In this document: piece by piece, positions 10,076-64,000 of the stretch
Numbering within the stretch: the first letter of the stretch is position 1
How the letters are laid out: every line of letters begins with the position of its first letter
Assembly (NCBI GenBank): GCA_038087875.1
Contig: CM075977.1
Location: forward strand, 111,290,001 to 111,354,000
DNA: 64,000 nucleotides
Source: Malacoraja senta
Lineage: Eukaryota
Direction of reading: 5' to 3'
Program-made: the position numbers and the translations under genes
Notes under the pieces: model-generated
Database searches by the model: none
Seen by the model: only the letters and a program-made list of their open reading frames with translations
Told to the model about the DNA's origin: nothing

Positions 10076-13027
10076 TTAAAATGACTTTCCCTCCGTTAAA
10101 TTCACGGCGCTTACTGATGACGTCATCAGCACCGCGACATGAGACTCCGGTAAGTTTTTAAAACCGGTCCCGACCTCCAGACCCGATTTTAACGCGAAAA
10201 ATCGCGATTTTTTTCAGCGGAGCTAAAAAATTTGCGACTGCTAGCAAAGCATGGCGCCACCGGAAGTCGAAGGGCCCGTTTCTGAGGTGATTCTAGTTTT
10301 CACTCTCTGGTCACGGAAACACAGGTCGATCCTGCAGAGCGCAAGTATCATAGCCTGGAACCCATCAACTATGTGTAAGTAAAGACCTTTAAAAGAAAGA
10401 CCCAGATATGAGGGCCTGTTCCAGATCTTGCTCATCACGAAAACTGCAATAGAAATTGGGGAAAGACCACCATGGCTCTACACTGCAAGAAGGTGCCAGC
10501 CCAACATAACCAGGACTCGATTTGAAAAGTTTTAGTTTTGGAAATAAAGCGCAGAAACAGGCCCTGCCACCATCCGACCAGCGATCCCCATACATTAACA
10601 CTGTCCTGCACGCTCGGGGCAATTTATAATCTTTAGCGAATTCTATTAACCTAGAAACCTGTACGTCTTTGGGATGTGGAAGGAAAGGGAACCCGGATCT
10701 CTGGCGCTGGAAGGCACCAACTCTACCGCCGTGTACCACTGTCCCACCGTGCCGCCCATGCAAAGCAAAGGGATTTTGGGGACTTTGTATATTATGGACT
10801 TTGTTAATACCGATTAAGTTTCAATCACCTGTCAACATATTACCCTTCCCGAGTTAGACCTATGCAAAAATCACCAATTTATTCAGCTGATGGGTGTGCG
10901 CAGCAGGTCAGAGGCAGGGAAAGATGCAAGGTACATATTTTAGTTTTGTCACATGTACAGAGGTACAGAGAAAAGTTTGTTGTTGCGTTCCAACCAGTCA
11001 GCGTAAACACAATGCATGATTACAATGGAGCCGTCCTCAATCTACAATGCATGATAAAGAAGTAACATGAATAACGTTTGGTTCAAGATACAGACCAGTA
11101 CAATCCGATCAAAGATCGTCCGAGGGTCTCGAATGAGGTAGATAATAGCTCAGGACCGCACTCTAGATGTTTGTTGGATGGTTAAGTTGCCCGCTAATAG
11201 CTGGGAAGAATCTGCCCTGAAACTGGAGGTGTGCTAGAACTAATGACCGTCGAGATGATTGCCATCCGAACCACACTGTAAGATCGGATCGTCCTAGACT
11301 TTATATTGGCTGAAGAGTGAAATGAAAGAGAATATTTGATGCAAATGTTAATTGGCTGCTGAAAATAACGATGACTGTTGTCCCAAGTTGGACAATAAGG
11401 AGGGAGTGTAGAAGAGTATTGTGATAATTGCTTCAATGCGAAATGTTGGCATTGGTTTTTATTGTAATGTGTACCGAGATACTTGACAGAAAAGCTATAC
11501 AAATGTTTACTTCAGCAGTAAACGCATATTTGTCATGCGCATTAGTCATGTGGGCAGTTAATAGCAAGTTCTCTCGCTAGTTATTGCCAAAATATATCTG
11601 CTGACATCAGCTGGTGCACATTGCAGAACTAACCACTTGGTTCAACAGTTTTCTATAATCTTCATGTACCATGTCAAGAAACTTGCTTCTCTGTATTGTG
11701 CGTCAGTCATGACACCGGATCAATAATGAATGCACTGACACACACACAGTACGCTGAAATCGCCCGATGGGCTTTATTTCAAGAGAACAACAAGGGGCTC
11801 TAGAAACGTCCCCCACAGATGCATAGCTTCCTCACTTCCTCTCTAATCAAAACTTCATAAATTCTAGTAGCAGGATTAGGCAATTCGGTCATTTAAGTAT
11901 ACTCCGCCATTTAATCATGGCTGAGCTACCTTTTCCTCTCAACCACACTGTCCTGCCTTCTCCCCATAACGCCATTGTCGTCCCACCGTCCGACCGTTAC
12001 TAATCAAGAACCTCCTCCTCCCCTCTGGACTCCAGGTTTTATAAGGGGTAAGTCTGTACGATCGTCCCACTACAATGAAAGCAAACTAAATAATAGCTGC
12101 ATTTAATAACCATTTTAGATGTTGTTCCATGTTGCTCCCTCATTGAAATATATTGAGAGATTTGTACATATACGAAATTAAGCATACTGAATTCAAAATT
12201 AAAATTATGTTCTCAATGGATTACATAAGTGAATTTACTTAGCATTTTCGATTTATCGCACTTCCATTAAAATTTACTTCGAAGGTTGTAAATATTTTAA
12301 ATTACGCAAACAGCATTAATAATGCTTGTGTTTCCTGTGTGCTAAATGCATCATTTGAGATTTATAAGCAGAACACTACGAAGAAAAGGACTAGAAATAA
12401 GTTAGTCAGGATCCAGGGGTTGCCACAGCAGGGAGGTTTGGGCATGCTTCTGGAGTCAACGTGTCAGAGAATTGTACAGTGAGGAAATTGGCCCTTCGGA
12501 CAATAATCTCGATATGAACATCTTTGTCTATGTACATTAATCCAGTTGGTCCCAATTAGATCCATATCCTTCCAACTTGTAATAAGAGGGAATTGCTGAT
12601 GCCGGTGTATACCAAAGATAGACACGATGTGCTTGCGTAACTCAGCGGATCAGGCAGCAACTCTGTAGGACATGGATACGTGACACTTGGTGCCCGGACC
12701 CATTCTAACGAGCTGAGAATTTGCAGCACTTTGTCTATCCTTCCAACTATTTCCTGATTAAGAGCATGTTCATGCGTCCAAACGTCTATCGTACATGTTG
12801 GTGTATCTCATTTTCACCACTTTGTTTACTAGCATATTCCAGATATCAAACCCTCTCGGAGTACAAAACATTTCCTTTGAACTAGAAGTACTGCATTTTT
12901 ATTATATTACACAAAGATTAAAAGCGAGTCGGATAATTATTATGATTGACAACCAAAGGTCGACAAAATCAGCAGACCGGGTTATATTGCAGTCGGAACA
13001 CTGGTCTGCTCAGCTTCCTCGGATGGA

Positions 13028-13043
13028 TCAGTCTCCACGCTTG
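13028..13043 (-). pseudogene. Copy A: candidate terminal coding exon (tail S-K-R-G-D-stop)
   Basis: Acceptor GTGTCCGCAG| is conserved in A, B and D, and phase 2 matches the TM exon donor. AATAAA follows at 12898-12903 on the minus strand. Confidence 0.4.
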
Positions 13044-13903
13044 CTGCGGACACCACAAGACCAATCAGAACAAGCCTCGGTAATTTGTACCAAAAGACCA
13101 TTTCTGACACCTCCATTCACAGCCGTCATTTAAATATGTGAAGTGATTCGGACGTAGATTTGAACGGTATTCTCCAGAGGGGAGACGTTATTGTCAATGT
13201 CAGCGTTTGACAACTAAATTTGAGGTGGACTTCAAAATGCGAAACAGGTGATTAACTTAACAGGGGACACGTATATTGGTCGTTGTGTTGACAGTGAGGA
13301 AGATTGTCTGACCTGCAGCAAGGTATGGTATTGGTTTATTATCGTCACCTTGACACAGATACGAGGAAAAAAACGTTGTTTCGTGTGTCATCCAGAAATA
13401 TTATTCCGTAGACCCAAGCTGTGCAGAATATAGTCTTACAGAGAAAGGGCAGAGGGCAAGGTAGACTGGAGGATCGGGAATACATTCTTATCTTTTGAGG
13501 GGTTTCTCAAAGCGTCTGAGCGGGTAAGAAACTGTTCTTCCATCTGTAGGTACATGATGCACCTGAACCATGTATTGCCAACGCATCAGGGGTACCACGG
13601 TGGCGCAGTTGAAGAGATGCTGCCTTGCAGCGCAGAGTCCCGGGTTCGATCCTGATTACGGGTGCTGTCTGTGAGCATTTTCCACGTGCTCCCCGCGACC
13701 GCATGGTTTTTGTCCCTCCCATATCCCAAAGACGTGCAGGTTTGTAGGATAATTGTCCTCTGCAAACGCCCCCTATAGTGCAGGATAGAACTAGTGCATG
13801 GATGATTGATGGTTGGCGCGGCCTAGGAAGCCTCGCATTTTTCAATCACACCCCAAAGGCAATTGAGTTTATATTCCAGGCATAGAAAAGCAATATTACA
13901 TAC

Positions 13904-14003
13904 CTGAGTTTCTCACGGTAGAAGATAACACACATCACTAAAAGGTAAAGGGTTTTCAATCCTAGAGGGATCCACAGGATCAGAACTATGTAATTCTGTG
14001 TGA
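13904..14003 (-). pseudogene. Copy A: transmembrane exon with central Lys
   Basis: CTCCTCAG| ... |GTATGT. (V)TQNYIVLILWIPLGLKTLYLLVMCVIFYREKL. 100 nt, phase 1 to 2. Confidence 0.85.
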
Positions 14004-15325: not shown

Positions 15326-15733
15326 CGGGTGTGACCCGCAGCTGGACCTCACGCTGTTACTGATGGGTGTACGGGGGGTGTACGCTCTTCCTGAACCCTT
15401 CTCTGACGTCCTTTCTCGGATCGTAGTTTCCCGGTTTGCTGAACTCCACCAGACACAGGTAGCCGTCACTGTCCTCCACGCTCAGCTGCTTTATCCTGGT
15501 TGAGGCGTTTCCCAGATCTGGGTCCCCGACGAGCTCGAACCGAGTTGTTCCGTTCTCCGCCGCCCAGGATCCATCAGTTTGAGGTCTGAACGTGACGATG
15601 TGTCGGTAGGGATCCTTCCTCATCCATGTGACCGCGAGGGCGCTGCGGTGATGCTGGGATTACCAATACACACAGGGTAACATGGACGAACCCCCCTCAG
15701 TCCCAGTCACCACAGAGACATTCCCGCCGGGAG
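15326..15733 (-). pseudogene. Copy A: second V-set Ig exon with two premature stops
   Basis: 408 nt, AG/GT flanked. LPCVYW*...W...RFELVGDPDLGNAS...DSDGYLCLVEF. TAA at 15660-15662 and 15357-15359 where the paralogs have Gln and Tyr. Confidence 0.9.
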
Positions 15734-16888: not shown

Positions 16889-17257
16889 CTTCCACAGTCA
16901 GCCGCGTTGGTATCACAGAGTGCCAATTCCCAACACTGAGCTCCAGGTGACACCGGTACCTATTATTGTCCTCCCATCTCAGTGGCTCCACCATTATCGA
17001 GGCATCTCCCTCTCTGAGGTTCCCCACGAATTTGAAACGACCTCCTCCGGCCTTCTGTGTCACTTCATCGCATCGGGGGCGGCCGGGACTGGGATATGTG
17101 CATTTAAACATAAGGCTGTGATGCGCTGATGCCATCTTGTGCCACAGCACGGTGCCGTTGAGGATGTGGATTAATGTACACGGCAACACAGCGGAGGCCC
17201 CTTCCACGGCATACACGTCATCAGGACCGGATATTGTCGAACCATTGTACGAAAAAC
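16889..17257 (-). pseudogene. Copy A: first V-set Ig exon (Siglec-15-like), open frame, Arg to His at the F-strand ligand position, 5-codon deletion
   Basis: 369 nt versus 384 nt in C and D. AVLPCTLIH...W...FKCTYPSPGRPRC...RFKFVGNLREGDASI.VEPL..ED..YRCHLEL. Confidence 0.9.
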
Positions 17258-17680
17258 CTACAGGGAGTGAGAGAAAGAGAGAGAAAGAGAGAGAGAGAGA
17301 GAAAGAGAAATAGGGGGATAGGTTATTATTGCAACGAGTACAGGTGTGGGGTTCCAAATCCACACTGTCCCCGGGGTGTTGTCACAGGCGATGTCTTCAG
17401 ATGTCTGTGGGACAGATAGATCAACTCGGGGAGTGGGTTACAGGCTGGGATATAATAGTAAGATTAATCGAGAACTTACCAGTTTGAAGTTTGATCTTTA
17501 TTTTATGAGGAGTTACGTTGGTGATTACGTGAAGAAGACCCGTCAGGGCGCATGCGCGTCAATCTTCAAAGCAGCGGAATGAAATCACAGACAACACCAT
17601 AATTGAAGTAACATATTAAGATGAGCAACATGAGAACTACCATATGACCTTTTTTATGAGAGAGGGTTGGGCGTGGCGGG

Positions 17681-17791
17681 CACGTAATCACCAACGTAAC
17701 TCCTCATAAAATAAAGATCAAACTTCAAACTGGTAAGTTCTCGTTTAATCTTACTATTTTACTTCGGAGTCACGTGAGTGACTACGTGAAG
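17681..17791. repeat. DIRS internal complementary region (circle-junction copy)
   Basis: Reverse complement of 17457-17531 (1 mismatch), then ATT, then the reverse complement of about 23146-23178. Confidence 0.92.
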
Positions 17792-19394
17792 ATTTCAAAG
17801 CTCTGTAATGTTATGCCGCAGATCCAAATCCCGGCCTCACTGCATTGATTTTCGATGAGAAACAATCAATAATGCGTTAAACATGAAATGGTAGTATCAT
17901 GCAATAACAATTTATTTGAATAATCAAAACAAACAGTAACCCATCTCTCCCAGAGGAACTAAACATGACTTAATACTGAATCTCTCCGATCGGCGATCGG
18001 CCGATGGTAAAAATAAAAAATAAAATTCATTTGACCACCCGGCACCTATAAAATATGGCCGCTGTGAACATCCATCGTCCTAGCCGACGACATTGCTGCT
18101 GCACTAGTGGAAAACGGATGTATACACTTCAGTGTTAATACCTGCCTTAATCAACATTTGCTTTAAACCACCTTGAGATAGTCTGCACTGACACTCTCCT
18201 GTGTGGCTTCATGTAACTGATAAACAATGCTGTTTCCACATTCCTTAAGATCTTTATAGCTTTAATATAATGAAAATAAATATGCCATTACACATAAACA
18301 TGGATCAGTAGGTTATGCTGAAACACAATTTTAACAAACCTGTGACACCTGGCCTGCTCTGCTTAAGCAGTACGCAATTATATAACATAACATTCTCTTC
18401 AGCAACTTCCATCCTGTCTAACAGAAGTTTTTTCAAAATCTGCATTTGCTATGCTGAACCAATGCCAAGAGCATAACCCCTTTCATGATTAGTTTGGCAA
18501 ATTCAGAGACATGCCAGGAACCTACTGTCGAAACATCTTGCGGACCTCACTTACATCCCAGATCGCCATATACCTGGGTTTAGGAGATTTAGAGTTGAAA
18601 TTCCTTTCATCAATCCAGCTATGATATGATGAAACTCAATAGGATCTTTCCTGACCCCATTAAAATCATACGATGACAAAGCACTTAAAGCTGTATTAAT
18701 GGTGCTATAACTTAGTCCCTCATCATCATAGAGGGTCAACAGGAACTCTAAAATATCCACAATACCTGTAGTATTATAGTCAATATTATCTTGTACACAA
18801 TATTGCTCCCATTTTTTTACATAAGTAATATACCCCTTTTGAGTACTTTCTCCAGGCTACAGTGAGCATGTCCACCGTAAACCCAGACATCCTTACTCCA
18901 GGTATGGCCTTCTTAAAACCTGCAAATTAACAAGTCAATTCAATCACATAACAGATGACTTTCCCGTGTTAGCGGATGCTCCAGTCAATTCCTAAGCTTG
19001 GGAACCACCAAAAAGAGGTTGGATCCCTAACTGTAACATCAAAGGGAAACCATGCTTGATTCGGCCAATTAGGTATTACAAGCACCCCCAAAGTGGCATC
19101 CTGCTTGATTTCTTGCAGACTCCGATGTATTAGGCAAAATGGTAGGGGAAAAAAAACAAAACCCATACCACCTCAATGTCAAAGTATTAATTGCAACTGC
19201 CACCTGGTCTGGTTCTCATGAAACCTATTTACGCATCTGATGGTTGACCTTGACGCAAAATAAATCGATTTCTGGCATTCATACACAAGTACTATATTAT
19301 TGAACACCTTCTTGTTGAACATTCAATCTATGTTGTCATGGAAAGTTCGTGACTTGGCGTCTGCTACTATGTAGAATCTACCTGGTACTATGTA

Positions 19395-20346
19395 GAATCT
19401 ACCTGGCACAAGGAACTGTGCTGGCTCCATTCCTGTTTACCATCTACACAGCGGATGCCCAATATAACACCAACAGCTGCTTTTTGCAGAAATTTTCGGA
19501 TGACACAGCTGTTGTCGGCCTCATTAAAGGGGGCAATGAGGAGGAGTATAGAGACATAATAAGTAACTTTGTGGAGTGGAGTGCACACAATAACCTCCAT
19601 CTTAACACCACAAAAACCAAGGAGATAGTTGTGGACTTCAGGAGGGGGAGGAGGAGGACTCAAGCAACACCAATCACCATTAAGGGCACTGAGGTGGAGG
19701 TGGTCGCTAACCACAGGTACCTTGGTGTGCAGCTTGACAGTGAGCTGGACTGGAAGTGTCATATGGAGGCGGTGTACAGGAAGGGACAAAGCCGACTGTA
19801 TTTTTTAAGGAGGCTGAGGTCATTTAACATCTGCCAACCCCTACTGTGCAGTGTCTACCATTCAGTGGTGGCCAGTGCTCTGTTTTTTGCTGTGGCCTGT
19901 TGGGGAGATTGCGCCCGCATAGCGGACTAAAACAGACTGGATAAGCTGATCAGGAAGGCCGGCTCAGTGGTCGGGGCTGAGCAACGAACGGTCCAGCAGG
20001 TGGCAGAGGCCAGAACTCTGAACAAACTGGGTTCTATAATGACCAACCCCACTCACCCACTCCATGCCCTGAAGGTGATCAAGAGCAGCATCTTCAGTCA
20101 GAGACTGATTGCACCAATGTGCAAAACTGAGAGGCATAGGAAGTCCTGTTTACCAGCTGCTATAAGGTTATATAATGCGCATAAATAACTGTATTTTAAT
20201 TTTAACTTGTATTTTAACTTGTATTTTAACTTGTTAAGTATGGAAGCTATTTGAGGAAACGTGTGGTGTTATGTCTGTCTTGAATCTGTCGTGGCACTGT
20301 AATTTCCTGTAAAGGATTATTAAAGGTATATCTTATCTTATCTTAT
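19395..20346 (+). mobile_element. 5'-truncated Rex1/Babar non-LTR element nested in the DIRS
   Basis: QGTVLAPFLFTIYTAD, QKFSDDTAVVGLI, LNTTKTKEIVVDFRR, RLYFLRRLRSF. (TCTTA)3 tail. Confidence 0.88.
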
Positions 20347-21296
20347 ATAAATAGCTGAAATATCTTTTCCAATGCACCAGGCCCAAATTTGATTAGCCAA
20401 TCTGTCACAAAATACCCACTTGATTCCACCGATGTGATTAATATATATGCCACTTGCGTAGTATTGTCAATCTGAAACTGAACATGCAGATACATTTGTT
20501 AGAGCAATAAGCCTTGTCCTTAAAACCTCTTAATAGTTAATTGCCCATGTCTGCAGAAGCGATGCCTCTTGCTCAGTCCATCTGCCTCCACAGTTGAAAC
20601 TTGTATCCGTGACACCCCACCCGAGTGCACTGACATTCATCTGCAAAATCATGGAAGGCTGGTCAAGCATTACCTTGCTATAATTCCTGGACACATGGTG
20701 AAACCATTGCAAATTAGCATAGTCTTTACTGATAACTGCATAGGTCTATTATAACCATATAACCATAACAGCACGGAAACAGGCCATCTCGGCCCTTCAA
20801 GTCCGTGCCGAACTTGTACTATAATGACCCGAATGTATCCTTAATGCCTCAATTAGCTTGATACAGCTGTCAATTAGCTCTACCCTTTTCCCCTGGGCAG
20901 AGCACTTAATTGAATCAATTGTGACCCAAATAGTCAGGTATTAATTTGGATTTCTCTGGATGGATCAGCAATCAGCGACTGAGCAGCAATTTTAGAGGCA
21001 AACGCCCACTGCTTACCCTCATGCATTCAGCATTGGATCCCGGCACATAGCCATGTTTGGATTCCTGTTTGGAGTTAATCCATACTAACCTTAGACACTC
21101 TTTTAGAGTGGGACTTATCGAAGCTGAAGCAGGTATCACTATCCATCTCCTCCATTTGCTTGTACATGCCTCTGTACCAAGCATGTTGTTCGACTCCATT
21201 CCCCACAATCATATCACATATGTGTGTGGCTCCATCTTCATCCACTATACATCCACGTGGGAGAACTTATGGATCCTGCAACAGCAGCTGCCCCAG

Positions 21297-21650
21297 GCAT
21301 GTGTGCATGTATTTTAGCACCATCTCGACCACTACGGAGAAACCGAGTGGGAGTAATGGCAGCCCTGCAAACAGGTGTTGCTTCAGGCCCATGTGCATAC
21401 TCCTGTAGCACTCTCTCGACCACTCCGCCATTTGAGTGGGAGAAATTTTGGCAACCCTTTACTAGGCGTCACCTTAGGCATGTGTGCATGTATTTTAGCA
21501 CTATCTCGACCACTGTGGTGCACCAAGTGGGAGGAATGGCAACCCTACAAACAGATGTTGCTTCAGGCACATGTGCATCCTCCTGTAGCACTCTCTCGAC
21601 CACTCCGACCCTTGAGTGGGGACTTTTGCAACCCTTTACTAGGTGTTGCT
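21297..21650. repeat. Diverged tandem duplication (2 x about 180 bp) inside the DIRS
   Basis: GGCATGTGTGCATGTATTTTAGCAC...GCAACCCTTTACTAGG occurs twice, starting at about 21297 and about 21477. Confidence 0.8.
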
Positions 21651-24138
21651 GCCTGACATCCCTTACGATGGAGCGTTCTTGAATTGCAACAAGACGCAAT
21701 GTTGTCTGACCTTGATACCCCTGGCTTGGCACTCACTCTGAGTTGGGGTTATCAGGTCACTGCCTACAGCAGCCGCCAGGACTAGCCATGCAATTCGATA
21801 CTCTGTTGGTATCCTGCTTCCCCAAACAGGCTGCACGTGCTAGTGACTCCAAATCGTGCTCCTTCCCGATGCCAACGCCGTCGAAAGGGAAGAATTGGAG
21901 CGCCTCTGGCCCCCGTACATCAGACATGGTGGGAAATGCTGGAACAAACTTAACAATTATTTGTCATAGCCAAAGACATTTATGTGAATGAAGACGCCCA
22001 TCCCAGTTAAACATGGGCTTTATTTACTTTTACTATGAGTAAACTGGCGTCTTGGGGAAGAAACCGTGCACAGTCCCTTTTAATGAGCAGCAATTACTAT
22101 GACGCCACCTGGTGTAACTCCCACAGGTGACTGATAATACAGCTGTACAAGGCTTCCCATTTCCTTAATTGAATCAATGATAATCATCTATCTCAGTATA
22201 ATAGTCACAATGTGACCAAGTGGTAACTATAATGTCTACCCTTTTGAACGCTTCTCAAAATTGCGTTCGTCTTTAATTTGGAGGGCAACCTGAAACCTCC
22301 TCAGAAGTAGCAGAAATTGCTACTTTTTAACCTCGACACATAAGGATGATAAACCACTAACCTCTCTTCCTGAGTTGGGGTTGGAGTCAGCCACACACTG
22401 ACCCTTTGTACTCCTCTCCACTGAGTAATTGATAAGCAGCCCTAAGCCTTACTCCTCTCCACTGAGGACATACACATATAACAGAGGGGACCCTCCTGGC
22501 CAGGCTCCTCATATTTCAAACAAATATGAGCTGCCAAAGTCTGGTCCTTCCTCAATGAGCCGGTAGTAACCCGACGACCATGCTCAGTCTGCACCCCCCC
22601 TCGGGAGTCGCTGACCTTACTGTCAGCGACTCTCTCAAGAAGTCCGACTTTACCGCGGACCGTAGCCGGTATCCCCGCGGTCTAGAGAACCCCGCAGCCA
22701 CTATTTTAAACATTTCGTTGGAGTCGCTGACCTGCCTGTCAGCGACTGGAAACAGCAAGCCTAACAGCCACCTCTATGGTGACCGCAGCTTGCTTCAACC
22801 CGCGGTCTATAAAAAACCCGCGGCCCCAATTAACCTCGGGAGTCGCGGACCGTTCTGTCCGCGACTCAACCAGCAAAACCCACCGGCAGCTTGCTACCGC
22901 ACTCCCGCGGTCCGAAGCCGACATCCCCGCGGTCCACAATTTCTCCGCGGTCCACTGGGTTCTGCTGAATTTTTCCATGTCGAGCAGGAACCTGGGAAAA
23001 TGATTCCTGCAATGGACAACCTGAAAAATAAGTTTAAACTTACCTGCAGGATTTTTTAAACTTACTGCTGGAGAACTGTGTTTCTCCCAGCCTGTCTGCG
23101 CCAATGCGACCGACGTAATGACGCGCATGCGCCCTGACGGGTCTTCTTCACGTAGTCACTCACGTGACTCCGAAGTAAAATCAACTGTTCATGGGTGTGT
23201 AATTCGCGTCTGTTGGTTTTTATAATGTTGCTGATTTAATTTCTGGGGAGAGGAAATGTTTGGACATTTTGCAGGGCCGGAGACGGAGATGGATTTTTTG
23301 GATTCCCTTACTGTCACATAATAGATACAGAGTGGAGATGGCCATTCGGCCCAACGGTTCTATACTGACTCCATGTAACATCAATCCAGCAAGTGGACGT
23401 CTCCATATTCTCAACACAGGGCCCTGCAAATTCCTTACTTTCACATACGGTCGGTTAAATCTGCCCGTCTCCACCCCCGCTCCCCCCTCTCTCCCCTCTC
23501 CCCCCTCTCCCCCCTCTCCCCCACCCCGCTCCCGCCGCCGGCGCCTCGTCCCAATGGAACCGCTCCCTGCGAGGACTCGTATCCGCCAGCAACACACTTG
23601 GTTCTTTGGCCAATCACCCCCATTCTCAATCGTCATCTCTTCTCTGTCCACCAATGGGAACAACCTCCATGTGCGCAATGTTAAATACCTCCATTAGGTC
23701 TCCTCCCGACCTCAGTGTTCGGAGCTGGAAACCAGTCGGCCCCTCCAGCTCGCACCTCCGGAAAATAAGGTCGCGGCTGCTCTGCTGTTAATTCTCTCTC
23801 CACATCCCCGCCCGCTCTCTGTCACCTTTTCCCCTCTTGCTTATCGAGAGTCTCTGTTTTATGAATGGCCATCTCCAGACGCATTTTCCTCCATCTTAGC
23901 CGTCGCCAGATAACCTTCACCGGGGGATCGGTTGCTCACGAGGGCGCCTCACCACCACCTTCGGAAGGACACTTAGGTATAGACAATATCACCTCAATCC
24001 GCACCCGTCCCACCCACCTCACCCATTGACAGACCTCAGCCAAAGTACAAACTGCTGGAGCGCGGACCGAGTGTGAACCGGTACACTGGGAGAGATGACG
24101 AGAGAAGGAGGAGATAACAAGGTGAGTAAAACACTTAC

Positions 24139-24199
24139 TGTAACCGTGGACTGAGACGGAGAGCAGGGCGGTGCAGAGACAAACCCGGAGAGAGCACAT
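24139..24199 (-). pseudogene. Copy A: leader (signal peptide) exon
   Basis: MCSLRVCLCTALLSVSVHGY + A|GTAAGT, a phase-1 donor matching the phase-1 V exons. Confidence 0.85.
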
Positions 24200-50334: not shown

Positions 50335-50394
50335 ATGCGCTCTCTCTGGGCTTGTCTCTGCACCGTCCTGCTCTCTGTCTCAGTCCGGGTTTAA
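50335..50394 (+). pseudogene. Orphan dead leader exon of the receptor family
   Basis: MRSLWACLCTVLLSVSVRV* aligns to the A/D leader without gaps. TAC>TAA and donor GT>GG. The upstream ACAGCAGTGGGTGAGG 5' UTR is shared. No V exon follows. Confidence 0.85.
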
Positions 50395-51778
50395 AGGAAG
50401 TGTTTTCTGGTGACCCGATTACCTCGTCTTTGTTTTGATTTTTCGTTATCTTTCATGATATTTACCCATTCGTGTAGTTCTCCCGGCGTTTGGATTTAAT
50501 GTCCAGGTGTCTGATTCATAAGTTTGCAGATGACGCACACATTGGAAGTGTTGTGGATAGGAGGAAGGTTGTAAGGGAATATAGCAGGATATAGATCAGT
50601 TTCAAAAATATGTTTGAAAACATGGGTGGAAAGTACAGAGTAAAAACCAGAATACTTAAGGACATTGATTTGCAGATGGATCTTGGGATGCAAATCCTTA
50701 GTCCTCTGAAAGTGGCGGCACATTTTCACCCCCAAAGGATATCGGCATAGATTTGAGGGAAGATTGAGACGTTTCGAATGTGTGTGATGGACTTCATTCA
50801 CTTGGAGACATTGCAAAAAGCTGCAGATGTTGGAATCTGTTTCTCCCACTATCCCGTTCCTCTTTCCCAGCCCCATCTCTTTCCATCGATATCCCTCCCC
50901 GTGACTTTACACCACTCATTTTCTCTCTTCAGCAAACACCATTTTGTCTCGTTTCCATCTCTGGTGCGATCATGCGAGAAACAGATTCCAGCATCTGCAG
51001 TTTCTTACGTCTCCACGTGAAGTTCACCACATCCATTCTAAACGTCTCAATCGTTCCTCAATACTACGCCCATGTCCTGCCGCTTTCAGAGGGCTGGGGA
51101 CTTGCTTCCCAACAAGATCCCTCTGCAAGTCAATGTTGTTAAGAGTCCTGATTTTTATTCTGCATATTCCCCCCGTGTATTTAACCCATATTTGAAAATG
51201 ATCTATACCTATGTACCAAAAAAATCCACGTACCTGAACTCACCTGTCGCTTGCCATGGTTTGTCTCGCCTCCCTTTATTTTTCAGTTTCCACACCCTTA
51301 ATACCATCGGTCTGAAGAAGGGTCCCGACACGAAACGCCGATCCATTCCTTTCACAAATGCTGCCTGTCCTTCCAGCACTTTCTGTTGTATTCGCATGCC
51401 GGGCCCATTATCCCTCGAAACTCTGCCGGAGAAAGTGTTGCAGGCAGGTTCTCTCACGGCCTTTCAGAGCTGTCTACATGTTAACATGATTTACCAAGGT
51501 GTAAAAGGCTACGGCCCAACTGGTGGCATCTGACGGTCAGCATGCACATGGTGGGCCGATGGGTAGGTTTTGATGCTGAATGGCTCTCTGGCTTAATCAT
51601 AATTATAATCATACTTTATTAGCCAAGTATGATTTGTAACATACGAGAAATTTAATTTGCCATACAGCCATATCAAAAGAAAGCAACAAAACACATAAAA
51701 TTCATGTTAACATAAACATCCACCACAGTGACTTCTCCACATTCCTCTCGGTGATGGAAGGCGATTCATCTACACACG

Positions 51779-57436: not shown

Positions 57437-57461
57437 TTTATGATTATCTCTCAACTTTTTG

Positions 57462-57555: not shown

Positions 57556-57616
57556 ATGTGCTCACTCCGGGTTTGTCTCTGCACCGTCCTGCTCTCCGTC
57601 TCAGTCCACGGTTACA
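57556..57616 (+). CDS. Copy D exon 1: signal peptide
   Basis: MCSLRVCLCTVLLSVSVHGY + A|GTAGGT. Confidence 0.87.
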
Positions 57617-60600
57617 GTAGGTGTTTTAGTTGACCTTGTTATCCCCTCCTTGTCTCGTCATATCTCCCCGTGTACCGGTTCGCACTCTGTCCGCGCTCCA
57701 GCAGTTTGTACTTTGGCTGAGGTCTATCAGTGGATGAGGTGGGGATTGAGGTGATATTGTCCATACCTAAGTGTCCTCCAGAAGGTGGTGGTGAGGCGCC
57801 TTCGTGACCCACCGAACCCCTGCTGAAGGTTATCTGTCGACGGCTAAGATGGAGGAAATGCGTATGGAGACCGCCATTCATAAAATAGAGTGAGACTCTC
57901 GATCAGCAAGAGGGGATAAGGTGACAGAGAGGAGGCGGGAATGTGGAGGGAGAATTAACAGCAGAGCAGCCGTGATGTTATTTTCTAGTGGTGCGAGCTG
58001 AAGGGGCCGACTGGTTTCCAGCTCCTAACACTGAAGTCGGGAGGAGATCTAATGGAGGGATTTAACATTGCGTACAGGGAGGTTGTTCCCATTGGTGGAC
58101 AGAGAAGAGATGACGATACAGCATGGAGGTGATTGGCCAAGGAACCAAGTGTGTTTCTGGGGGACACGAGTCCTCGCAAAGAGCGGTTCCACTGGGACGC
58201 GGCGCTGACGGCGATAGAGGGGGGGGCGGGGGAGGAGACCGGCAAATTTAACCGACGGTATGTGAAAGTAAGGAAGTTGCAGGGCAGTGTGTTGAGAATA
58301 TGGAGATCCGACTGCTGGATTTATGTTGCATGGAGTTAGCGTAGAACCGATGGAACGAATGGTCGTCTCCACCGTAAATCTTTTATGTGACAGTGAGAGA
58401 ATCCCAAGAATCCATCTCCGTCCAAACATTTCCCAGAATGTAAATAAATCAGCAACATTATAAAAACCAACTGACCGGCGGAACAGACGTGATTACACAC
58501 CCATGAACAGTTGATTATATCCCAGCCTGTAAGCCACTCCCCGTATTGATGTATCTGTCCCACAGCTTGTGACAACCACCCGGGGACAGTGTGGATTTAG
58601 AACACCNNNNNNNNNNNNNNNNNNNNNNNNNNNNNNNNNNNNNNNNNNNNNNNNNNNNNNNNNNNNNNNNNNNNNNNNNNNNNNNNNNNNNNNNNNNNNN
58701 NNNNNNNNNNNNNNNNNNNNNNNNNNNNNNNNNNNNNNNNNNNNNNNNNNNNNNNNNNNNNNNNNNNNNNNNNNNNNNNNNNNNNNNNNNNNNNNNNNNN
58801 NNNNNNNNNNNNNNNNNNNNNNNNNNNNNNNNNNNNNNNNNNNNNCTCCAGACGTTTCGCACAATAATTGGACAGTATCCGGTGCGGATGAGGTGTCTGC
58901 CGTGGAAGGGGCCTCCGCTGTGTTGCCGTGTACATTCACCCACCCACCCACTGATCGTAATCTCACCGGCTACTTGCTGTGGCACAAGGAGTCATCAACA
59001 CTTCCCAGCTTTGAGTTTCGTTGCACATATGCCGGTCCCGGTCGCCCCCGATGCGATGAAGTGACACAGGAGGCCGGAGGAAGTCGGTTCAAACTCGTGG
59101 GGAACCTCAGAGAGGGAGATGCCTCGATAATGGTGGAGCCACTGAGACGGGAGGACAATGGTCACTATCGGTGCCGCCTGGGTCTCAGTGTTGGGAGATT
59201 TCAATCTCTGATTCCAACGCAGCTGTCTGTGGAAGGTGAGAACAATGTTCGGAGACTGTGGCTGCCCCAGAGCTCACGGATCGCGGGTTCCCCCGGTACA
59301 ATGCTGATCAATACATGTTGATGGTTCAATTCAATAATATTGTATTCTCACACGTACCTAGGTACAGTGAAATACTTTGTTATGCAGACAACCCTGAAAA
59401 GTCATGTAGCAGACCTTACCTTGGCAGTACACAAGTGCCGCCACATTTTCGCGCCGACAGCTGCAGAGATTCACCGCAGTTCTCTCTACTGCCTGCCGCC
59501 GCTCGTGGCATCGCCCCCACCTCCCCCTCACTGTCATTCTCGGCTGCCCTCCTCGCCACCCGACGGCCCACCTTCCTCTCGGCGGTTGCTCCCGTGTCCC
59601 TCATCGTTCTTGTGGCGCGGGTTCTGTCGTTAGATCCGCGGAAGGCGAGCCGGTCCTAAAGCAGGGCCAAGCCGGAGAACACTCGCAGCCGAACTGCTGG
59701 GCGAGAATAATCGCCACGTGGGGTCGGGTGGGGGGGGGGGGAGGGATGTGGCTGAAGGGCGGGGGTTCATGCTCCTGATTCCTATCCAATTAATCCGTCT
59801 GGACAGTGAGCTCCTGGAGTGGACGAGACGCAGGCCCTGATGTGATGATATCCACAGTCAAATACAGGTAGATTGTGTAAACCGAGAAATAGGAAGATGG
59901 CGATCACCCTGTTGGAATTGTTCTCCAACTATCAATTGGAACCGAGGGGCCCAGTATTAAAGAAGGTGTCGGTCCCCAATCCCCTGTGGGCGGGTCTCCC
60001 TCTAGGTGTGGAGTTCACCGGTTCACACATTGAATATTCCCCGTGGAGAACAGTTTTGGGATCTGGGGAGGCGCGGGTTCGCTGTCGCTCACTCTCTCGC
60101 TCTCAGGGCAGCGCCGAGGGAGAGCCGCGCTGTCAGAGGCGACCAGTGACCACTGATCCGGAGCCATCCTTGAATACGTCCTGTCCCCTGCGCCCTCTGA
60201 CCCACCTTCCCTGAGACCGTCACTGTTAGCTCCACACTGGGCAACGCCTCCACCTACTCCCACAGGGAGAGGTCGGTACAAGACGATTCACCCAAAGAAC
60301 GTTGATACATTCCGGTGTCTATCCTTCCCTCAGCTCCCGTAGGGAATGTCTCAGTGGTGACTGGGACTGAGGGGGCTTCGGCCACGTTACCATGCGTGTA
60401 TCGGCAATCCCAGTATCACCGCAGAGCCCTCACGGTCACATGGATGAGGAAGGATCCCTATCGACAAATCGTCGCGTTCATACCTCAAACTGATGGATCC
60501 TGGGCGGCGGGGAACGGAGCAACTCGGTTAGAGCTGGTCGGGGACCCAGATCTGGGAAACGCCTCAACCAGGATAAAGCAGCTGAGTGTGGAGGACAGTG

Positions 60601-62904
60601 ACGGCTACCTGTGTCTGGTGGAGATCAGCAAACCGGAAAACTACGATGCGACAAAGGACGTCGAAGAACGGTTCAAGGAAAGCGTTCACCCCCCGTACAC
60701 ACATCAGTACCAGCGTGAGGTCCAGCTGCGTGTCACACCCGGTAAGGAACCATCGCCACATCCTGCCGTGTAGAGCGAAGGTGCAGAGGGAGGGAGGAGA
60801 GCAGGAACAGGAAACCCTGTCTCTCAGGACTCAGTGGGCGCAGCCTCGCATCTGGAGGGTCAGATACAACTCCAGAGATAAGCAACCACAGTTGATCATT
60901 GTATTGGAGTCCTTTAGCGAGGTGAGGAGTTGAATGCCTAAGAGGGAGCAAGGTGCTGTGGTACGTTTGGATTCTCAGAAGGATCTAGGTTGGGTCCCCG
61001 CCAGGAGTTTGGGGAACCAGATGCGAAAAGGCGGCATTAAGTCAACGCACTGTCGGGGATTGAAAAGCATTTATCGAGCAGAATGTAGAATGAAATATGT
61101 GGAGATTGGTTCTTGGTCTCAGCTATTCACAGTCTGCATCAGTGAGTTGATTGAAGTGGACAATTGTCAGGTCTGATGATGATGGTAGGGCCGTGGGACT
61201 GTGGGAGGGCAGGAGGACGCGGAGATTCGGAGGAGGTGGACAAGCTGATCGATTGGATGGGAGCATAATGTGGAATAAAATGTGGCAAATTATCCACACG
61301 GGTGAATAAACATAAAACCAGTGTTTATTAAATGGTGAGAGATCGAGTGCTGTGGATGTTCAAAAGGAACCGAGTGTGCTTGTTCTCATGCCAATGAAGG
61401 TTGATGTACTGATGTGGAAGAGTCGAGAAAGGCAATAGTTGGTCAGGTTTTATCAAGAGAGGATTTATATTCAAGGGTTGAGATATTTTATCGCAGTTAT
61501 ATCAGGATCTAGCGAGATCTCACCTGCTGTACTGGGTCGGACTTTGCTCTTCTTAACTACAATAAAGCCACGATTAGTGTGGAGGGAGTGCAGTGAAGAT
61601 TCCGTCACTGTTTCCCGGAAGGGCAGGTTGATTGAAGATCAGGGGAGATTGAGTAGACCGGAGACCCCGGTGAATGCAGGTACATGAAACTTGAGCATAA
61701 AAAAAAGCTATTGGAGGAACTGGATAGGCCAGGTAGCATATCTGGAAGGAAATTGGCGAATGACAATTCATATCGAGACCTTGCCTCAAAACTGGAAGGA
61801 TTCCCGGACTAAACGACGTCTTTGGATTTCCTTCTACAGTTGCCTGACTTCCTGAGCGCTGTCAGCAGGCTGATATTTGCTCGAGCAGATTAGACCTGTA
61901 TTCTCCAGAGTGTAAAGGTGATCTTAGTGAAGCATATACCATTTGTACATTGTCGATCGCTCCCCTTCCCAGTGACCATTCTGACCTCTCTCACTCTCTC
62001 CTCAGTCACACAGAGTTATATGGTTCTGATCCTGTGGACCCCTCTAGGATTGAAAACCGTTTTCCTTTCAGTGATGTGTGTTATCTTCTACCGTGACAAA
62101 CTCAGGTATGCAATATTGATTTTCTATGCCTGGAATATAAACTCAATGGCCTTTGGGGTGTGATTGAAAAATGTGAGGCTTCCTAGGCCGCGCCAACCAT
62201 CGATCATCCATGCACTAGTTCTATCCATGCGGTCACAGGGAGCACGTGGGAAATGCGCACAGACAGCACCCGTGATCAGGATCGAACCCGGCACTGCGCT
62301 ACAAGGCAGCATCTCTACAACTGCGTCACCGTGGTACCCCTGTCGCGTTGGCAATACATGGTTCAGGTGCATCATGTACCTACAGATGGAAGAACAGTTT
62401 CTTACCCGCTCAGACGCTTTGAGAAACCCCTCAAAAGATAAGAATGTATTCCCGATCCTCCAGTCTACCTTGATAGGGCCCTTGCCCTCTGCCCTTTCTC
62501 TGTAAGACTATATTCTGCACGGCTTGGGTCTATGGAATAATTTATCTGGATGACACGCGAAACAAAGTTTTTTTCCTCGTATCTGTGTCAAGGTGACGAT
62601 AATAAACCAATACCATACCTTGCTGCAGGTCAGACAATCTTCCTCACTGTCAACACAACGACCAATATACGTGTCCCCTGTTAAGTTAATCACCTGTTTC
62701 GCATATTGATGTCCACGTCAAATTTAGTTGTCAAACGCTGACCTTGACAATAACGTCTCCCCCCTGGAGAATTCCGTTCAAATCTCCGTCCTAATCACTT
62801 TAAGTGACGGCTTTGAATGGATGTGCCAGAAATGGTCTTGTGGTACAATTACCGTGGCTTGTTTTAATTGGTCTTGTTGTGTCCGCAGCCAGCGTGGAGA
62901 CTGA
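57556..62904 (+). CDS. SIGLEC15-like: Copy D: apparently intact Siglec-15-like receptor gene; join(57556-57616, 58852-59235, 60334-60741, 62006-62105, probably 62889-62904), about 322 aa
   Basis: All four core exons are open, GT-AG flanked and phase-compatible (1,1,1,2). Signal peptide, V-set with YRCR, second V-set, and TM with LGLK. Confidence 0.8.
58607..58845. other. Assembly gap (239 N) covering the end of intron 1 of copy D
   Basis: The paralogs carry a (TC)n polypyrimidine microsatellite here. The acceptor CTCCAG is still visible. Confidence 0.97.
58852..59235 (+). CDS. Copy D exon 2: Siglec-15-like V-set domain, essential Arg present (CGC 59175-59177)
   Basis: WTVSGADEVSAVEGASAVLPCTFTHP...W...FRCTYAGPGRPRC...RFKLVGNLREGDASIMVEPLRREDNGHYRCRLGL. 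Confidence 0.9.
60334..60741 (+). CDS. Copy D exon 3: second V-set domain with a long F-G insert
   Basis: LPCVY...TW...RLELVGDPDLGNAS.RIKQLSVEDSDGYLCLVEI plus about 25 extra residues before QLRVTP. AG/GT intact. Confidence 0.9.
62006..62105 (+). CDS. Copy D exon 4: transmembrane with central Lys
   Basis: (V)TQSYMVLILWTPLGLKTVFLSVMCVIFYRDKL. CTCCTCAG| and |GTATGC. Confidence 0.87.
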
Positions 62905-63073
62905 TCCATCCGAGGAAGCTGAGCAGACCAGTGTTCCGACTGCAATGGAACCTGCCTCGCAATGAAGTCCGCCGTTCCCACCTGCTTTTGCGGTCTGGCT
63001 GATTTTGTCGACCTTTGGTTGTCAATCATATTAATTCTCCGACTCGCTTTTAATCTTTGTGTAATATAATAAA
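62889..63073 (+). CDS. Copy D candidate terminal exon: S-Q-R-G-D-stop (62889-62904), 3' UTR, AATAAA at 63068-63073
   Basis: Acceptor TCTTGTTGTGTCCGCAG|, phase match to the TM exon, and a poly(A) signal conserved in A, B and D. Confidence 0.45.
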
Positions 63074-63578
63074 ATGCAGTACTAGTTCAAAAAAAAGGTT
63101 TTGTACTCCGAGAGGGTTTGATATCTGGAATATGCTAGTAAACAAAGTGGTGAAAATGAGATACACCAAAATGTACGATAGACGTTTGGACGCATGAACA
63201 GGCTCTTAATTAGGAAATAGTTGGAAGGATAGACAAAGTGCTGCAAATTCTCAGCTCCTTGGAATGGGACCGGGCACGAAGTGTCACGTTTCCATGTCCT
63301 ACAGATTTGCTGCCTGATCCGCTGAGTTACGCAAGTACATCGTGTCTATCTTTGGTATACACCGGCATCAGCAGTTCCCTCTTATTACAAGTTGGAAGGA
63401 TATGGATCTAATTGGGACCAACTGGAATAATGTACATAGTTAAAGATGTTCATATCGACATTATTGTCCGAAGGGCCAATTTCCTCACTGTACAATCCTC
63501 TGACACGTTGACTCCAGAAGCATGTCCAAACCTCCCTGCTGTGGCAACCACTGGATCCTGACCAACTTATTTCTAGTC

Positions 63579-63813
63579 TGTTCAAGAAGGAACTGCAGAT
63601 GCTGGAAAATCGAAGGTAGAAAACATTGCTGGAGAAACTCAGCAGGTACGGCAGCATCTATGGAGCGAAGGAAATAGGCAACGGTTCGGGCCGAAACCCT
63701 TCTTCAGACTGATCTTCTTCAGTCTGAAGAAGGGTTTCGGCCCGAAACGTTGCCTATTTCCTTCGCTCCATAGATGCTGCCGTACCCGCTGAGTTTCTCC
63801 AGCAATTTTGTCT
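63579..63813. mobile_element. 235-bp Penelope-type hairpin insertion with 15-bp TSD, specific to copy D
   Basis: TSD AACTTATTTCTAGTC at 63564-63578 and 63814-63828. Inverted arms of about 90 bp around a 6-nt loop (63713-63718). Empty sites are seen in A (about 12390) and B (about 34310). Confidence 0.85.
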
Positions 63814-64000
63814 AACTTATTTCTAGTCCCTTTCTTCGTAGTGCTCTGCTTATAAATCTCAAATAATGCATTTAGCACGCAAGGAACACAAGCTTATTAT
63901 TAATGCAGTTGGCTTAATTTAAAATATTTACAACCTTCGAAGTAAATTTTAATGGAAGTGCGATAAATCGAAAATGCTAATTAAATTCACTTATGCAATA

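What the first reader, a model, noticed from the sequence alone, without database searches (positions are those of the whole stretch)
12080..64000. Expanded, rapidly turning-over cluster of Siglec-15-like V-V-TM(Lys) receptor genes in a cartilaginous fish
Seen in the sequence: four paralogous gene units (A, B, C on minus; D on plus) plus leader and intron relics, sharing exons, introns and flanks. Established knowledge (recalled): the V1 signature (EVSA..G..AVLPCTFTHP, an extra FRC...C cysteine pair, RF.L.GN.R..D.S, Y.CR) and the TM motif LG.K. match Siglec-15, a normally single-copy, conserved V-C2 receptor that signals through DAP12. Inference: here it has become a multigene family undergoing birth-and-death evolution like CD33-related Siglecs, with one intact copy and at least three disabled ones in 52 kb. 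This looks like a lineage-specific activating glycan-receptor family.
Basis: partly seen in the sequence, partly recalled or inferred. Interest (0 to 1): 0.85.

Follow-up and report, generated by a model that had tools for sequence, protein, structure and literature searches.

The report
Siglec-15-like two-V-domain receptor gene cluster
This stretch of a skate-like genome holds three tandem copies (one intact, two broken) of an immune-receptor gene whose outer domain is related to the sialic-acid receptor Siglec-15, part of a large and so far undescribed family of paired activating and inhibitory receptors found across sharks and rays.

Summary
The repeated receptor genes are real, but there are three transcription units, not four.

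- **Gene D** (57.5-63.6 kb, + strand) is an intact 5-exon, 322-aa gene: leader, V1, V2, a transmembrane segment with a lysine, and a short tail.
- **Gene A** (12.1-24.2 kb, - strand) has two stop codons in V2. It has also lost the key Arg in V1. Its "leader relic" is its own leader, displaced by a LINE-bearing insertion.
- **"B" and "C"** are one gene with a duplicated V2 segment. It has a stop in V1, a dead V2b acceptor and no leader.
- **Relics:** an orphan leader at 50.3 kb and several 3'-end relics.

No assembly gap lies in an exon. One gap ends 6 nt before D's V1 exon.

V1 is specifically Siglec-15-like:
- A family-only profile hits PDB 7ZOZ at 2e-21; the next single-domain hit is about 1e-9.
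- The top structural match is Siglec-15.
- The Arg, the extra Cys pair and the PLGxK transmembrane motif are all shared.

The second domain is V-set, not C2, so this is not a Siglec-15 orthologue. Both V domains pair domain by domain with chondrichthyan V-V-C2 "Siglec-15-like" genes.

The family has activating and ITIM-bearing forms. It is already modelled in RefSeq for about 18 elasmobranch species, mostly as "uncharacterized". I found no paper on it.

V1 shows dN/dS of 1.0-2.5. Expression and glycan binding are untested. The scan also noted copies on neighbouring DNA.

The parts
57556..57616 (+). Gene D exon 1: leader (signal peptide MCSLRVCLCTVLLSVSVHGY), donor GTAGGT, phase 1
58607..58845 (.). 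Assembly gap inside intron 1 of gene D; ends 6 nt before the V1 exon; acceptor AG at 58850-58851 is read
58852..59235 (+). Gene D exon 2: V1, a Siglec-15-like V-set domain. Intact, with the Arg codon at 59175-59177 and the extra FRC...C cysteine pair
60334..60741 (+). Gene D exon 3: V2, a second V-set domain with a long F-G segment; intact
62006..62105 (+). Gene D exon 4: transmembrane segment with mid-membrane Lys (LILWTPLGLKTVFLSVMCVIFY) and start of the tail; donor GTATGC, phase 2
62889..62904 (+). Gene D exon 5: last coding exon (…SQRGD, stop), followed by 3'-UTR-like sequence shared with A and B up to about 63582
24139..24199 (-). Gene A exon 1: leader with an intact ATG and donor GTAAGT
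17457..23204 (.). 5.7-kb insertion in intron 1 of gene A, absent from C and D; holds a LINE RT fragment at 19349-19930
16889..17257 (-). Gene A V1 exon: open frame, 15-bp in-frame deletion in the B-C loop, and Arg replaced by His (codon 16947-16949)
15326..15733 (-). Gene A V2 exon with two in-frame TAA stops (15660-15662 and 15357-15359)
13904..14003 (-). Gene A transmembrane exon (…LILWIPLGLKTLYLLVMCVIFY…)
13028..13043 (-). Gene A last coding exon (…SKRGD, stop); 3'-UTR-like sequence runs down to about 12093
41130..41513 (-). Gene BC V1 exon ('C'): TGA stop at 41164-41166 near the G strand; Arg kept
39553..39960 (-). Gene BC V2a exon ('C'): open frame, AG acceptor, one in-frame 6-bp deletion and one 6-bp insertion
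38284..38780 (.). High-copy LINE (CR1 ORF1-like 5') fragment at the junction of the duplicated segment between 'C' and 'B'
37451..37858 (-). Gene BC V2b exon ('B'): open frame, but the acceptor AG is changed to AA (37859-37860). An independent read contig shows the same change
36040..36139 (-). Gene BC transmembrane exon (…LILRIPLGLKTLFLLVMCVIFY…), the only one for 'B' and 'C' together
34967..35000 (-). Gene BC last coding exon (…SKRGDLSIRGS, stop)
42574..43390 (-). LINE-derived ORFs where the leader of gene BC would be expected. Homology with the A and D upstream regions stops at 42517
50284..50406 (+). Orphan leader-exon relic (MRSLWACLCTVLLSVSV…, donor lost); no V exon follows it
25745..27598 (-). 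Relic upstream of gene A. It is 93% identical to 43607-45463, and part of it (26074-26753) is 78% like the genes' 3' UTR region
43607..45463 (-). The same relic upstream of gene BC, showing that the tandem unit is longer than the gene
45460..47975 (-). Rearranged 3'-flank and 3'-UTR relic of a further unit, running into the gap at 47976

Best explanation
The region is part of a tandem cluster of type I membrane receptor genes from an elasmobranch-wide family.

**Gene architecture (shown).** Each full gene has five phase-compatible exons:
- a signal peptide;
- V1, a Siglec-15-type V-set domain that keeps the F-strand Arg and the extra C-C' cysteine pair;
- V2, a second and older V-set domain;
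- a transmembrane helix with a central Lys in a PLGLK motif;
- a tail of about 9 residues.

**Likely mechanism (inferred from Siglec-15, not shown here).** V1 binds a ligand, most likely a sialylated glycan. The membrane Lys pairs with an Asp in an ITAM adaptor such as DAP12 or DAP10. This would make copy D an activating receptor on myeloid or lymphoid cells. ITIM-tailed relatives in other elasmobranchs would be its inhibitory partners.

**State of this window (shown).** D is intact. A and BC are pseudogenes. BC carries an internal V2 duplication. LINE insertions, an orphan leader and 3'-end relics record birth-and-death turnover.

**Origin (partly shown).** Both V domains are sister, domain by domain, to those of chondrichthyan V-V-C2-TM genes, which include the elephant-shark gene once auto-named Siglec-15. 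The family therefore most likely arose from that Siglec-15-like ancestor by losing the C2 exon. It then expanded, with fast amino-acid change in V1.
For: **Units and exon models:**

**D model:** 322 aa with canonical GT-AG at every junction. It aligns end to end at 76-78% identity with RefSeq models from two other skates.

**V1 specificity:**
- Single sequence against PDB: Siglec-15 9.6e-15, CD33 6.5e-10.
- Family-only profile: 7ZOZ 2.4e-21 over the whole V domain; the next single-domain hits are about 1e-9.
- AlphaFold2 model (pLDDT 82): top Foldseek match is 7ZOZ in PDB, then sialoadhesin. In Swiss-Prot the top match is human Siglec-15 at 37% identity.
- Shared columns LPC.FTHP, F.C…C and Y.CR.

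**Transmembrane motif:** PLGLK here, against PLGIK in bird Siglec-15 and LGLK in mammalian Siglec-15. The roles of the Lys and of R143 are taken from PMC7226832.

**Tree:** V1 with V-V-C2 domain 1 at 96/86, V2 with V-V-C2 domain 2 at 99/89. The AU test does not reject V1 plus Siglec-15 as one clade, p = 0.445.

**Paired forms:**

**Selection:** V1 dN is 0.17-0.20 between D and A or C, against an intron distance of 0.10 (p = 0.0003 and 0.005). V1 dN/dS is 1.0-2.5; V2 is 0.5-1.0.

**Not duplicates of one locus:** intron divergence is 6-10% and the lesions differ between copies. Copy-specific contigs in a read set match exactly.
Against: - There is no transcript evidence for D. The only run served behaves like genomic DNA.
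- The branch point and polypyrimidine tract of D's V1 acceptor lie in an unread gap.
- The free tree does not join V1 to bony-vertebrate Siglec-15. The split is 91/76, from about 125 columns.
- The second domain is V-set, not the C2 of Siglec-15.
- Several family members, and copy A, lack the Arg, so sialic-acid binding may not be general.
- Individual dN/dS tests against synonymous sites are weak (p = 0.03-0.24). Two of the three copies are pseudogenes, which pushes dN/dS towards 1.
- The stop in C's V1 was not covered by independent reads.
- The AlphaFold alignment included Siglec-15 sequences, so the fold match is not fully independent.
Confidence: 0.7

Rival explanations
1. The family is a generic V-set immune receptor of the pIgR / CD300 / TREM / TIM / skate MDIR kind. 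On this view the Siglec-15 resemblance is superficial or convergent.
For: - The single V2 sequence hits pIgR and TIM-4 ahead of Siglec-15.
- In the tree, the V2 group sits next to TIM-like domains at 93/75, and V1 falls on that side of the main split.
- RefSeq auto-names vary widely: JAML, HAVCR1-like, pIgR-like, sialoadhesin-like.
Against: - The V1 profile prefers Siglec-15 over any other single-domain chain by about 12 orders of magnitude.
- The pIgR totals are sums of roughly 20-bit domains. The best single-domain hit of the V2 profile is again the Siglec-15 V domain, at 48 bits.
- The top structural matches are Siglec-15, then sialoadhesin.
- The Arg, the cysteine pair and the PLGxK TM motif are shared with Siglec-15.
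- No MDIR-named protein appeared among the homologues. MDIR sequences themselves could not be compared.
Confidence: 0.12
2. All copies in this window are dead. On this view D is an unexpressed or recently silenced gene, and the functional members of the cluster lie elsewhere.
For: - Two of the three units are clearly disabled.
- No protein model of D exists in a collection of 5.8 billion clusters; the best V1 match is 75%.
- No RNA run could be found.
- Part of D's intron 1 is unread.
Against: - D keeps five open exons, all splice sites that can be read, the two Ig cysteine pairs, the Arg and the TM Lys.
- V2 shows dN/dS below 1 in comparisons with D.
Confidence: 0.15
3. The units are haplotype or assembly duplicates of one locus.
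For: The assembly has four gaps here, and short-read contigs pile up on shared parts.
Against: - Intron divergence is 6-10%.
- The lesions, indels and TE insertions differ between copies, and D is in the opposite orientation.
- Contigs specific to B and to D match exactly at ordinary depth.
- Comparable multi-copy clusters are annotated in many other elasmobranch genomes.
Confidence: 0.02

Closest known systems
Siglec-15 (human Q6ZMC9, structure 7ZOZ; orthologues in mammals, birds, turtles, lungfish, gar and teleosts)
   Same: - The N-terminal V-set domain shares LPCTFTHP, the extra F(R/K)C…C cysteine pair, GN.R..D.S and Y.CR with the essential Arg.
- It is the best sequence and fold match.
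- The TM has a central Lys in a (P)LGxK motif and there is no ITIM (PMC7226832).
   Different: - The second domain here is V-set instead of C2.
- The tail is about 9 residues, against about 45.
- The gene is multi-copy, with inhibitory paralogues.
- V1 identity to Siglec-15 is only about 36%.
- The tree does not place V1 inside the bony-vertebrate Siglec-15 clade, although the AU test allows it.
Chondrichthyan V-V-C2-TM 'Siglec-15-like' genes (Callorhinchus LOC103174418, Mobula hypostoma LOC134346377, the Heptranchias ITIM form, Amblyraja LOC116971575)
   Same: - Both V domains are sister, domain by domain (96/86 and 99/89).
- A Lys-bearing TM is present in some and ITIM tails in others.
- In Mobula the LOC number lies next to those of family members.
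   Different: - They keep a membrane-proximal C2 domain that this family lacks.
- Overall identity to D is about 31-33%.
- Their TM motif differs (IPLIK or MPAAK).
RefSeq models of the same family in other skates (Leucoraja LOC129695295, Amblyraja LOC116971356, Rhinoraja LOC144592311)
   Same: They have the same five-part architecture, leader, TM motif and tail, and are 69-78% identical to D over the whole length.
   Different: - They are different genes or species, and D itself has no model in the collection.
- They are named 'uncharacterized', 'sialoadhesin-like' or 'Siglec-15' by pipeline only.
CD33-related Siglecs and other paired receptor clusters (PILR, SIRP, KIR/LILR)
   Same: - The evolutionary mode is the same: tandem cluster, activating/inhibitory pairs with similar ectodomains, pseudogenes, and loss of the Arg in some copies.
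- Amino-acid change is fast in the ligand-binding V domain.
   Different: - These families are not homologous beyond the Ig fold.
- CD33 and PILR score far below Siglec-15.
- The origin is independent, in cartilaginous fish.

Membership tests
Siglec-15 (orthologue) | N-terminal V-set domain specifically similar to the Siglec-15 V domain | tested here: met
   PDB phmmer 9.6e-15. Family-only profile 2.4e-21 against about 1e-9 for other single domains. Top Foldseek match in PDB and in Swiss-Prot.
Siglec-15 (orthologue) | Essential F-strand arginine (human R143) for sialic-acid binding | tested here: met
   CRL is present in D (59175-59177) and in C. It is replaced by His in A and by other residues in some relatives. 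The role of R143 is taken from PMC7226832.
Siglec-15 (orthologue) | Extra conserved cysteine pair in the C-C' region | tested here: met
   FRC…RC in D. Both columns are at least 90% conserved across the family and Siglec-15.
Siglec-15 (orthologue) | Second extracellular domain of the C2-set | tested here: not met
   The second domain matches Pfam V-set (2.9e-13) and V domains in PDB. No C2 exon lies between V2 and TM.
Siglec-15 (orthologue) | Transmembrane lysine for DAP12/DAP10 pairing | tested here: met
   The Lys is central in the TM of A, BC and D, and the PLGxK motif is shared with bird Siglec-15. The adaptor pairing itself was not tested.
Siglec-15 (orthologue) | One-to-one orthology by phylogeny and synteny | tested here: inconclusive
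   V1 is sister to domain 1 of chondrichthyan V-V-C2 genes. Its relation to the bony-vertebrate Siglec-15 clade is unresolved, and the AU test gives p = 0.445. Synteny could not be read. The multi-copy state argues against one-to-one orthology.
Siglec-15 (orthologue) | Binds sialylated glycans | not testable with these tools
   This needs a glycan array or a binding assay.
Elasmobranch V-V-TM paired receptor family (RefSeq models, unnamed) | Leader M.SLRVCLC.VLLSVSV, V1, V2, then either an IPLGLKT-type TM with a DKL(S/R)K..D tail or an ITIM tail | tested here: met
   The D model matches end to end at 69-78% identity. The window's V1 and V2 fall inside the 100/100 family clades.
CD33-related Siglecs | V domain closest to CD33-type Siglecs, followed by C2 domains | tested here: not met
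   CD33 scores 5-13 orders of magnitude below Siglec-15. There is no C2 domain. Other Siglecs form a separate clade.
pIgR / CD300 / TREM-type V receptors (including skate MDIR) | V domains specifically closest to pIgR/CD300-type domains | tested here: not met
   The pIgR totals are sums of roughly 20-bit domains. The best single-domain hit of the V2 profile is the Siglec-15 V domain at 48 bits. MDIR sequences themselves were not available, so that comparison was not made.

The most novel reading that the evidence does not exclude
Elasmobranchs independently turned the otherwise conservative Siglec-15 lineage into a rapidly diversifying system of paired activating and inhibitory receptors. The architecture is V-V with the C2 exon lost, and the ligand-binding V1 domain is under positive selection. 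This would be a cartilaginous-fish counterpart of mammalian CD33-related Siglecs or KIR/LILR. It has not been described in the literature and is mostly labelled 'uncharacterized' in annotations.
Probability: 0.4. Interest if true: 0.7.

Novelty: new variant of a known kind. Interest (0 to 1): 0.55.

Why it matters
Siglec-15 is regarded as one of four conserved Siglecs regularly present in fish (PMC7226832). It is also a target in bone and cancer therapy.

A whole family derived from its lineage, with a different domain plan and with activating and inhibitory pairs, would show three things:
- "Rapidly evolving Siglec-like" receptor systems arose more than once in vertebrates.
- The V-V-C2 layout may be the ancestral chondrichthyan form.
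- Innate receptors of sharks and rays, which are poorly known, gain a concrete gene family that can be tested.

For annotation, about 90 RefSeq protein clusters with inconsistent names could be placed in one family.

Tried and rejected
- **RNA evidence.** Two run searches, one with the whole gene and one with the V2 exon alone, returned only one run. That run covers introns and flanks evenly and shows no joints, so it behaves as DNA. Splicing of D could not be tested.
- **Synteny.** P0039 is not on record, P0240 came without DNA or neighbours, and P0164 showed no neighbour within 10 kb.
- **Species identity.** The Amblyraja locus L001 is about 90% identical to the window's units. That equals the identity among the window's own paralogues, so it does not settle the species.
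- **Quick tree.** The 110-row tree left V1, Siglec-15 and the other Siglecs in a polytomy. A careful 76-row tree and an AU test replaced it.
- **Literature.** Searches for Siglec-15 with cartilaginous-fish terms, for Siglec with shark and DAP12, and for MDIR found no description of this family.
- **Rejected readings.** C is not a separate gene, because it has no TM or 3' exons. The 24.1-kb leader is not an orphan. V2 is not a recent copy of V1, since they share about 30% identity and fall in separate old clades. The units are not haplotype duplicates.
- **Left out.** The spliced D protein has no reference, so it was not sent to the large databases or to structure prediction. Only single exons and stored relatives were used.

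Full report
**1. Assembly gaps**

The window has four runs of N.
- Three of them (47976-48175, 51779-51949, 52363-52580) lie in the TE-rich stretch between gene BC and gene D. No exon of the family maps there.
- The first gap abuts a 184-bp piece (47792-47975) that is about 90% identical to the 3'-UTR region of A, B and D. Beyond the gap comes a LINE fragment, so continuity across it is not shown.
- The fourth gap (58607-58845) lies in intron 1 of gene D and ends 6 nt before the V1 exon. The acceptor AG is read.
- The sequences on both sides of that gap are colinear with paralogues C and A. These have only a CT-rich intron stretch there and no exon.
- No reading frame crosses a gap, and I did not fill any gap.

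**2. What is repeated**

Self-BLAST gives units at 88-94% identity. tblastn with relatives from the protein searches locates the exons. The units resolve into three transcription units.

*Gene D (+ strand)*
- Exons: leader 57556-57616, V1 58852-59235, V2 60334-60741, TM 62006-62105, last exon 62889-62904.
- All readable junctions are GT-AG. The phases fit: 1-1-1, then 2.
- The product is 322 aa.
- It aligns end to end with RefSeq models from Leucoraja (78%), Amblyraja (76%) and Rhinoraja (69%).

*Gene A (- strand)*
- Exons: leader 24199-24139, V1 17257-16889, V2 15733-15326, TM 14003-13904, last exon from 13043.
- A 5.7-kb insertion (17457-23204) separates the leader from V1. It is absent from C and D and holds a LINE RT fragment.
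- V2 has two TAA stops.
- V1 has a 15-bp in-frame deletion, and His replaces the Arg.

*Gene BC (- strand)*
- "C" contributes V1 (41513-41130, TGA at 41164-41166) and V2a (39960-39553).
- "B" contributes V2b (37858-37451), TM (36139-36040) and the last exon (from 35000).
- There is a single TM and 3' end for the two.
- The duplicated segment corresponds to A 14501-16166. At the junction sits a ~500-bp fragment that reaches word depths of 5,000-54,000 in a read set and resembles the 5' end of a CR1 ORF1.
- V2b has lost its acceptor (AG to AA). A contig from run X1 covers 37778-37894 without a difference.
- Upstream homology stops at 42517, just short of where the leader should be. LINE-derived ORFs follow.

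*Relics*
- An orphan leader at 50284-50406, + strand.
- 3'-end or flank relics at 25.7-27.6 kb, 43.6-45.5 kb and 45.5-48.0 kb.

**3. Not assembly or haplotype duplicates**
- Intron distances between copies are 0.064-0.10.
- Each copy has private lesions and TE insertions.
- D is inverted relative to A and BC.
- Copy-specific contigs in run X1 match exactly at ordinary depth.

**4. What the domains are**

Both Ig exons are Pfam V-set.

*V1*
- The single sequence hits Siglec-15 (7ZOZ) at 9.6e-15, ahead of CD33 at 6.5e-10.
- A profile built only from elasmobranch V1 domains hits 7ZOZ at 2.4e-21 over the whole V domain. The next chains that match as a single domain are near 1e-9. The pIgR totals are sums of several weak domains.
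- An AlphaFold2 model of D V1 has pLDDT 82. Its top Foldseek match in PDB is 7ZOZ (TM 0.76), followed by sialoadhesin. Its top match in Swiss-Prot is human Siglec-15 at 37% identity, with PILR-alpha only at rank 26.
- One caveat: the alignment used for folding contained Siglec-15 sequences.
- In a 53-sequence alignment of family and Siglec-15 V domains, these are at least 90% conserved: the B-strand Cys, the C-C' Cys pair, the Trp, the D.S motif and Y.C. The Arg after the F-strand Cys is present in most sequences but not all.

*V2*
- The best single-domain hit of the V2 profile is again the Siglec-15 V domain (48 bits). The pIgR domains score about 20 bits each.

*Transmembrane segment*
- It carries a central Lys in PLGLK. 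Bird Siglec-15 has PLGIK and mammalian Siglec-15 has LGLK.
- The functional meaning of the Lys (DAP10/12 pairing) and of R143 is taken from PMC7226832. It was not tested here.

**5. Relatives**

An exhaustive HMMER search with D V1 found 334 representatives, 14 of them below 1e-30. A word-indexed search with one of these found 90 clusters, all elasmobranch.
- They come from about 18 species: skates, an electric ray, stingrays, mantas, a sawfish, carpet sharks, a bullhead shark, the whale shark, a sawshark, a cow shark and a houndshark.
- RefSeq names are mostly "uncharacterized". Scattered names include Siglec-15, sialoadhesin-like, JAML, HAVCR1-like, pIgR-like, and Siglec-10 or Siglec-12.
- Two kinds occur. 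Some have the PLGLK TM and a DKLRK..D tail. Others have an uncharged TM and a long tail ending in VIYAAV-type ITIMs. Single-V and V1-V2-V1-V2 variants also exist.
- The window holds only the Lys-TM kind. Tail exons of the inhibitory kind gave no tblastn hit.
- No model of D itself is in the collection; the best V1 match is 75%.

More distant hits include true Siglec-15 from mammals, birds, a turtle, lungfish, gar and teleosts. They also include chondrichthyan V-V-C2-TM proteins, among them a Callorhinchus gene once auto-named Siglec-15.

**6. Phylogeny**

The careful tree has 76 V domains and 125 columns.
- Family V1 (100/100) is sister to domain 1 of the V-V-C2 proteins (96/86).
- Family V2 (100/100) is sister to their domain 2 (99/89).
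- Bony-vertebrate Siglec-15 forms its own group, next to the other Siglecs.
- The deep split has 91/76 support, and the alignment is short.
- Forcing V1, V-V-C2 domain 1 and Siglec-15 into one clade costs 1.2 log-likelihood units. It is not rejected (p-AU 0.445).

I read this as follows. The family shares its two-V ectodomain with the chondrichthyan V-V-C2 genes and most likely lost the C2 exon. Descent of that whole group from the Siglec-15 lineage rests on the profile, fold, motif and TM evidence. The tree allows it but does not prove it.

**7. Mode of evolution**

| Comparison | dN | dS | Intron distance | dN/dS |
|---|---|---|---|---|
| V1, among window copies and the Amblyraja gene | 0.12-0.20 | 0.05-0.17 | about 0.10 | 1.0-2.5 |
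| V2, same copies | 0.08-0.14 | 0.08-0.19 | about 0.065 | 0.5-1.0 |

- The excess of V1 dN over intron distance is significant for D against A (p = 0.0003) and D against C (p = 0.005). It is not significant for A against C.
- Tests against synonymous sites alone are weak (p = 0.03-0.24).
- Changes cluster at the N-terminus, in the B-C to C' stretch and in the F-G region. The C''-D-E core is almost invariant.
- This fits diversifying selection on a binding face. Two of the copies are pseudogenes, so part of the signal may be relaxed constraint.
- The window's copies do not form one clade apart from Leucoraja and Amblyraja genes. D's V1 groups with the V1 of an inhibitory Leucoraja gene. The duplications are therefore not very recent, or ectodomains are exchanged between paired genes.

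**8. Mechanism and confidence**

*Shown:* the gene structures, the lesions, the domain types, the specific similarity to Siglec-15, and the presence of the Arg and the Lys.

*Inferred:* D encodes an activating receptor that signals through an ITAM adaptor paired to the TM Lys and that recognises a sialylated ligand through V1. Inhibitory paralogues elsewhere would counterbalance it.

*Untested:* expression, ligand and adaptor.

My confidence in the overall reading is about 0.7.

**9. Novelty**

The proteins of this family already exist as pipeline models in many genomes, so the family is not unseen. I found no paper describing it. Its names are inconsistent, and this window's intact gene has no model. 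I class it as a new variant of a known kind: a Siglec-15-lineage receptor with a V-V layout that forms a paired multigene family.

Notes from this scan report further copies just before and after this window and on another piece of the same genome.

Noticed in passing
window 27862-28936: A 63-bp unit is repeated about 17 times in frame at the 5' end of a CR1-like LINE. EN and RT domains follow at 29984-32215. Another first-stage note records the same repeat.
   Followed up: partly
window 53945-54470: Tandem array of units of about 66 bp at 91-92% identity, in the intergenic stretch between BC and D.
   Followed up: no
window 38308-38883: Word depth in read set X1 rises to 5,000-54,000, so this LINE 5' fragment belongs to a very abundant repeat family in this genome.
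   Followed up: partly
window 4044-10075: LINE-derived ORFs on the - strand, outside the finding: ORFs whose translations resemble LINE endonuclease and reverse transcriptase at 4044-7824 (not checked against Pfam), and a coiled-coil ORF1-like ORF at 9065-10075.
   Followed up: no
P0001 (Narcine bancroftii) and P0071 (Hemitrygon akajei): Relatives with other domain plans: V1-V2-V1-V2 in P0001 and V2-V2 with an ITIM tail in P0071. Exon-block duplication like the B/C event recurs across the family.
   Followed up: partly
L001 (Amblyraja radiata CM021368.1, 103.42-103.44 Mb): The locus is about 90% identical to the window's units, including the flanks and the 3' relics. That is as close as the window's own paralogues are to each other.
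   Followed up: partly
window 41560-41620 and 17258-17300: A long CT-rich tract lies directly upstream of the V1 acceptor in C and A. The equivalent stretch in D is the unread gap, which may explain why the assembly broke there.
   Followed up: no
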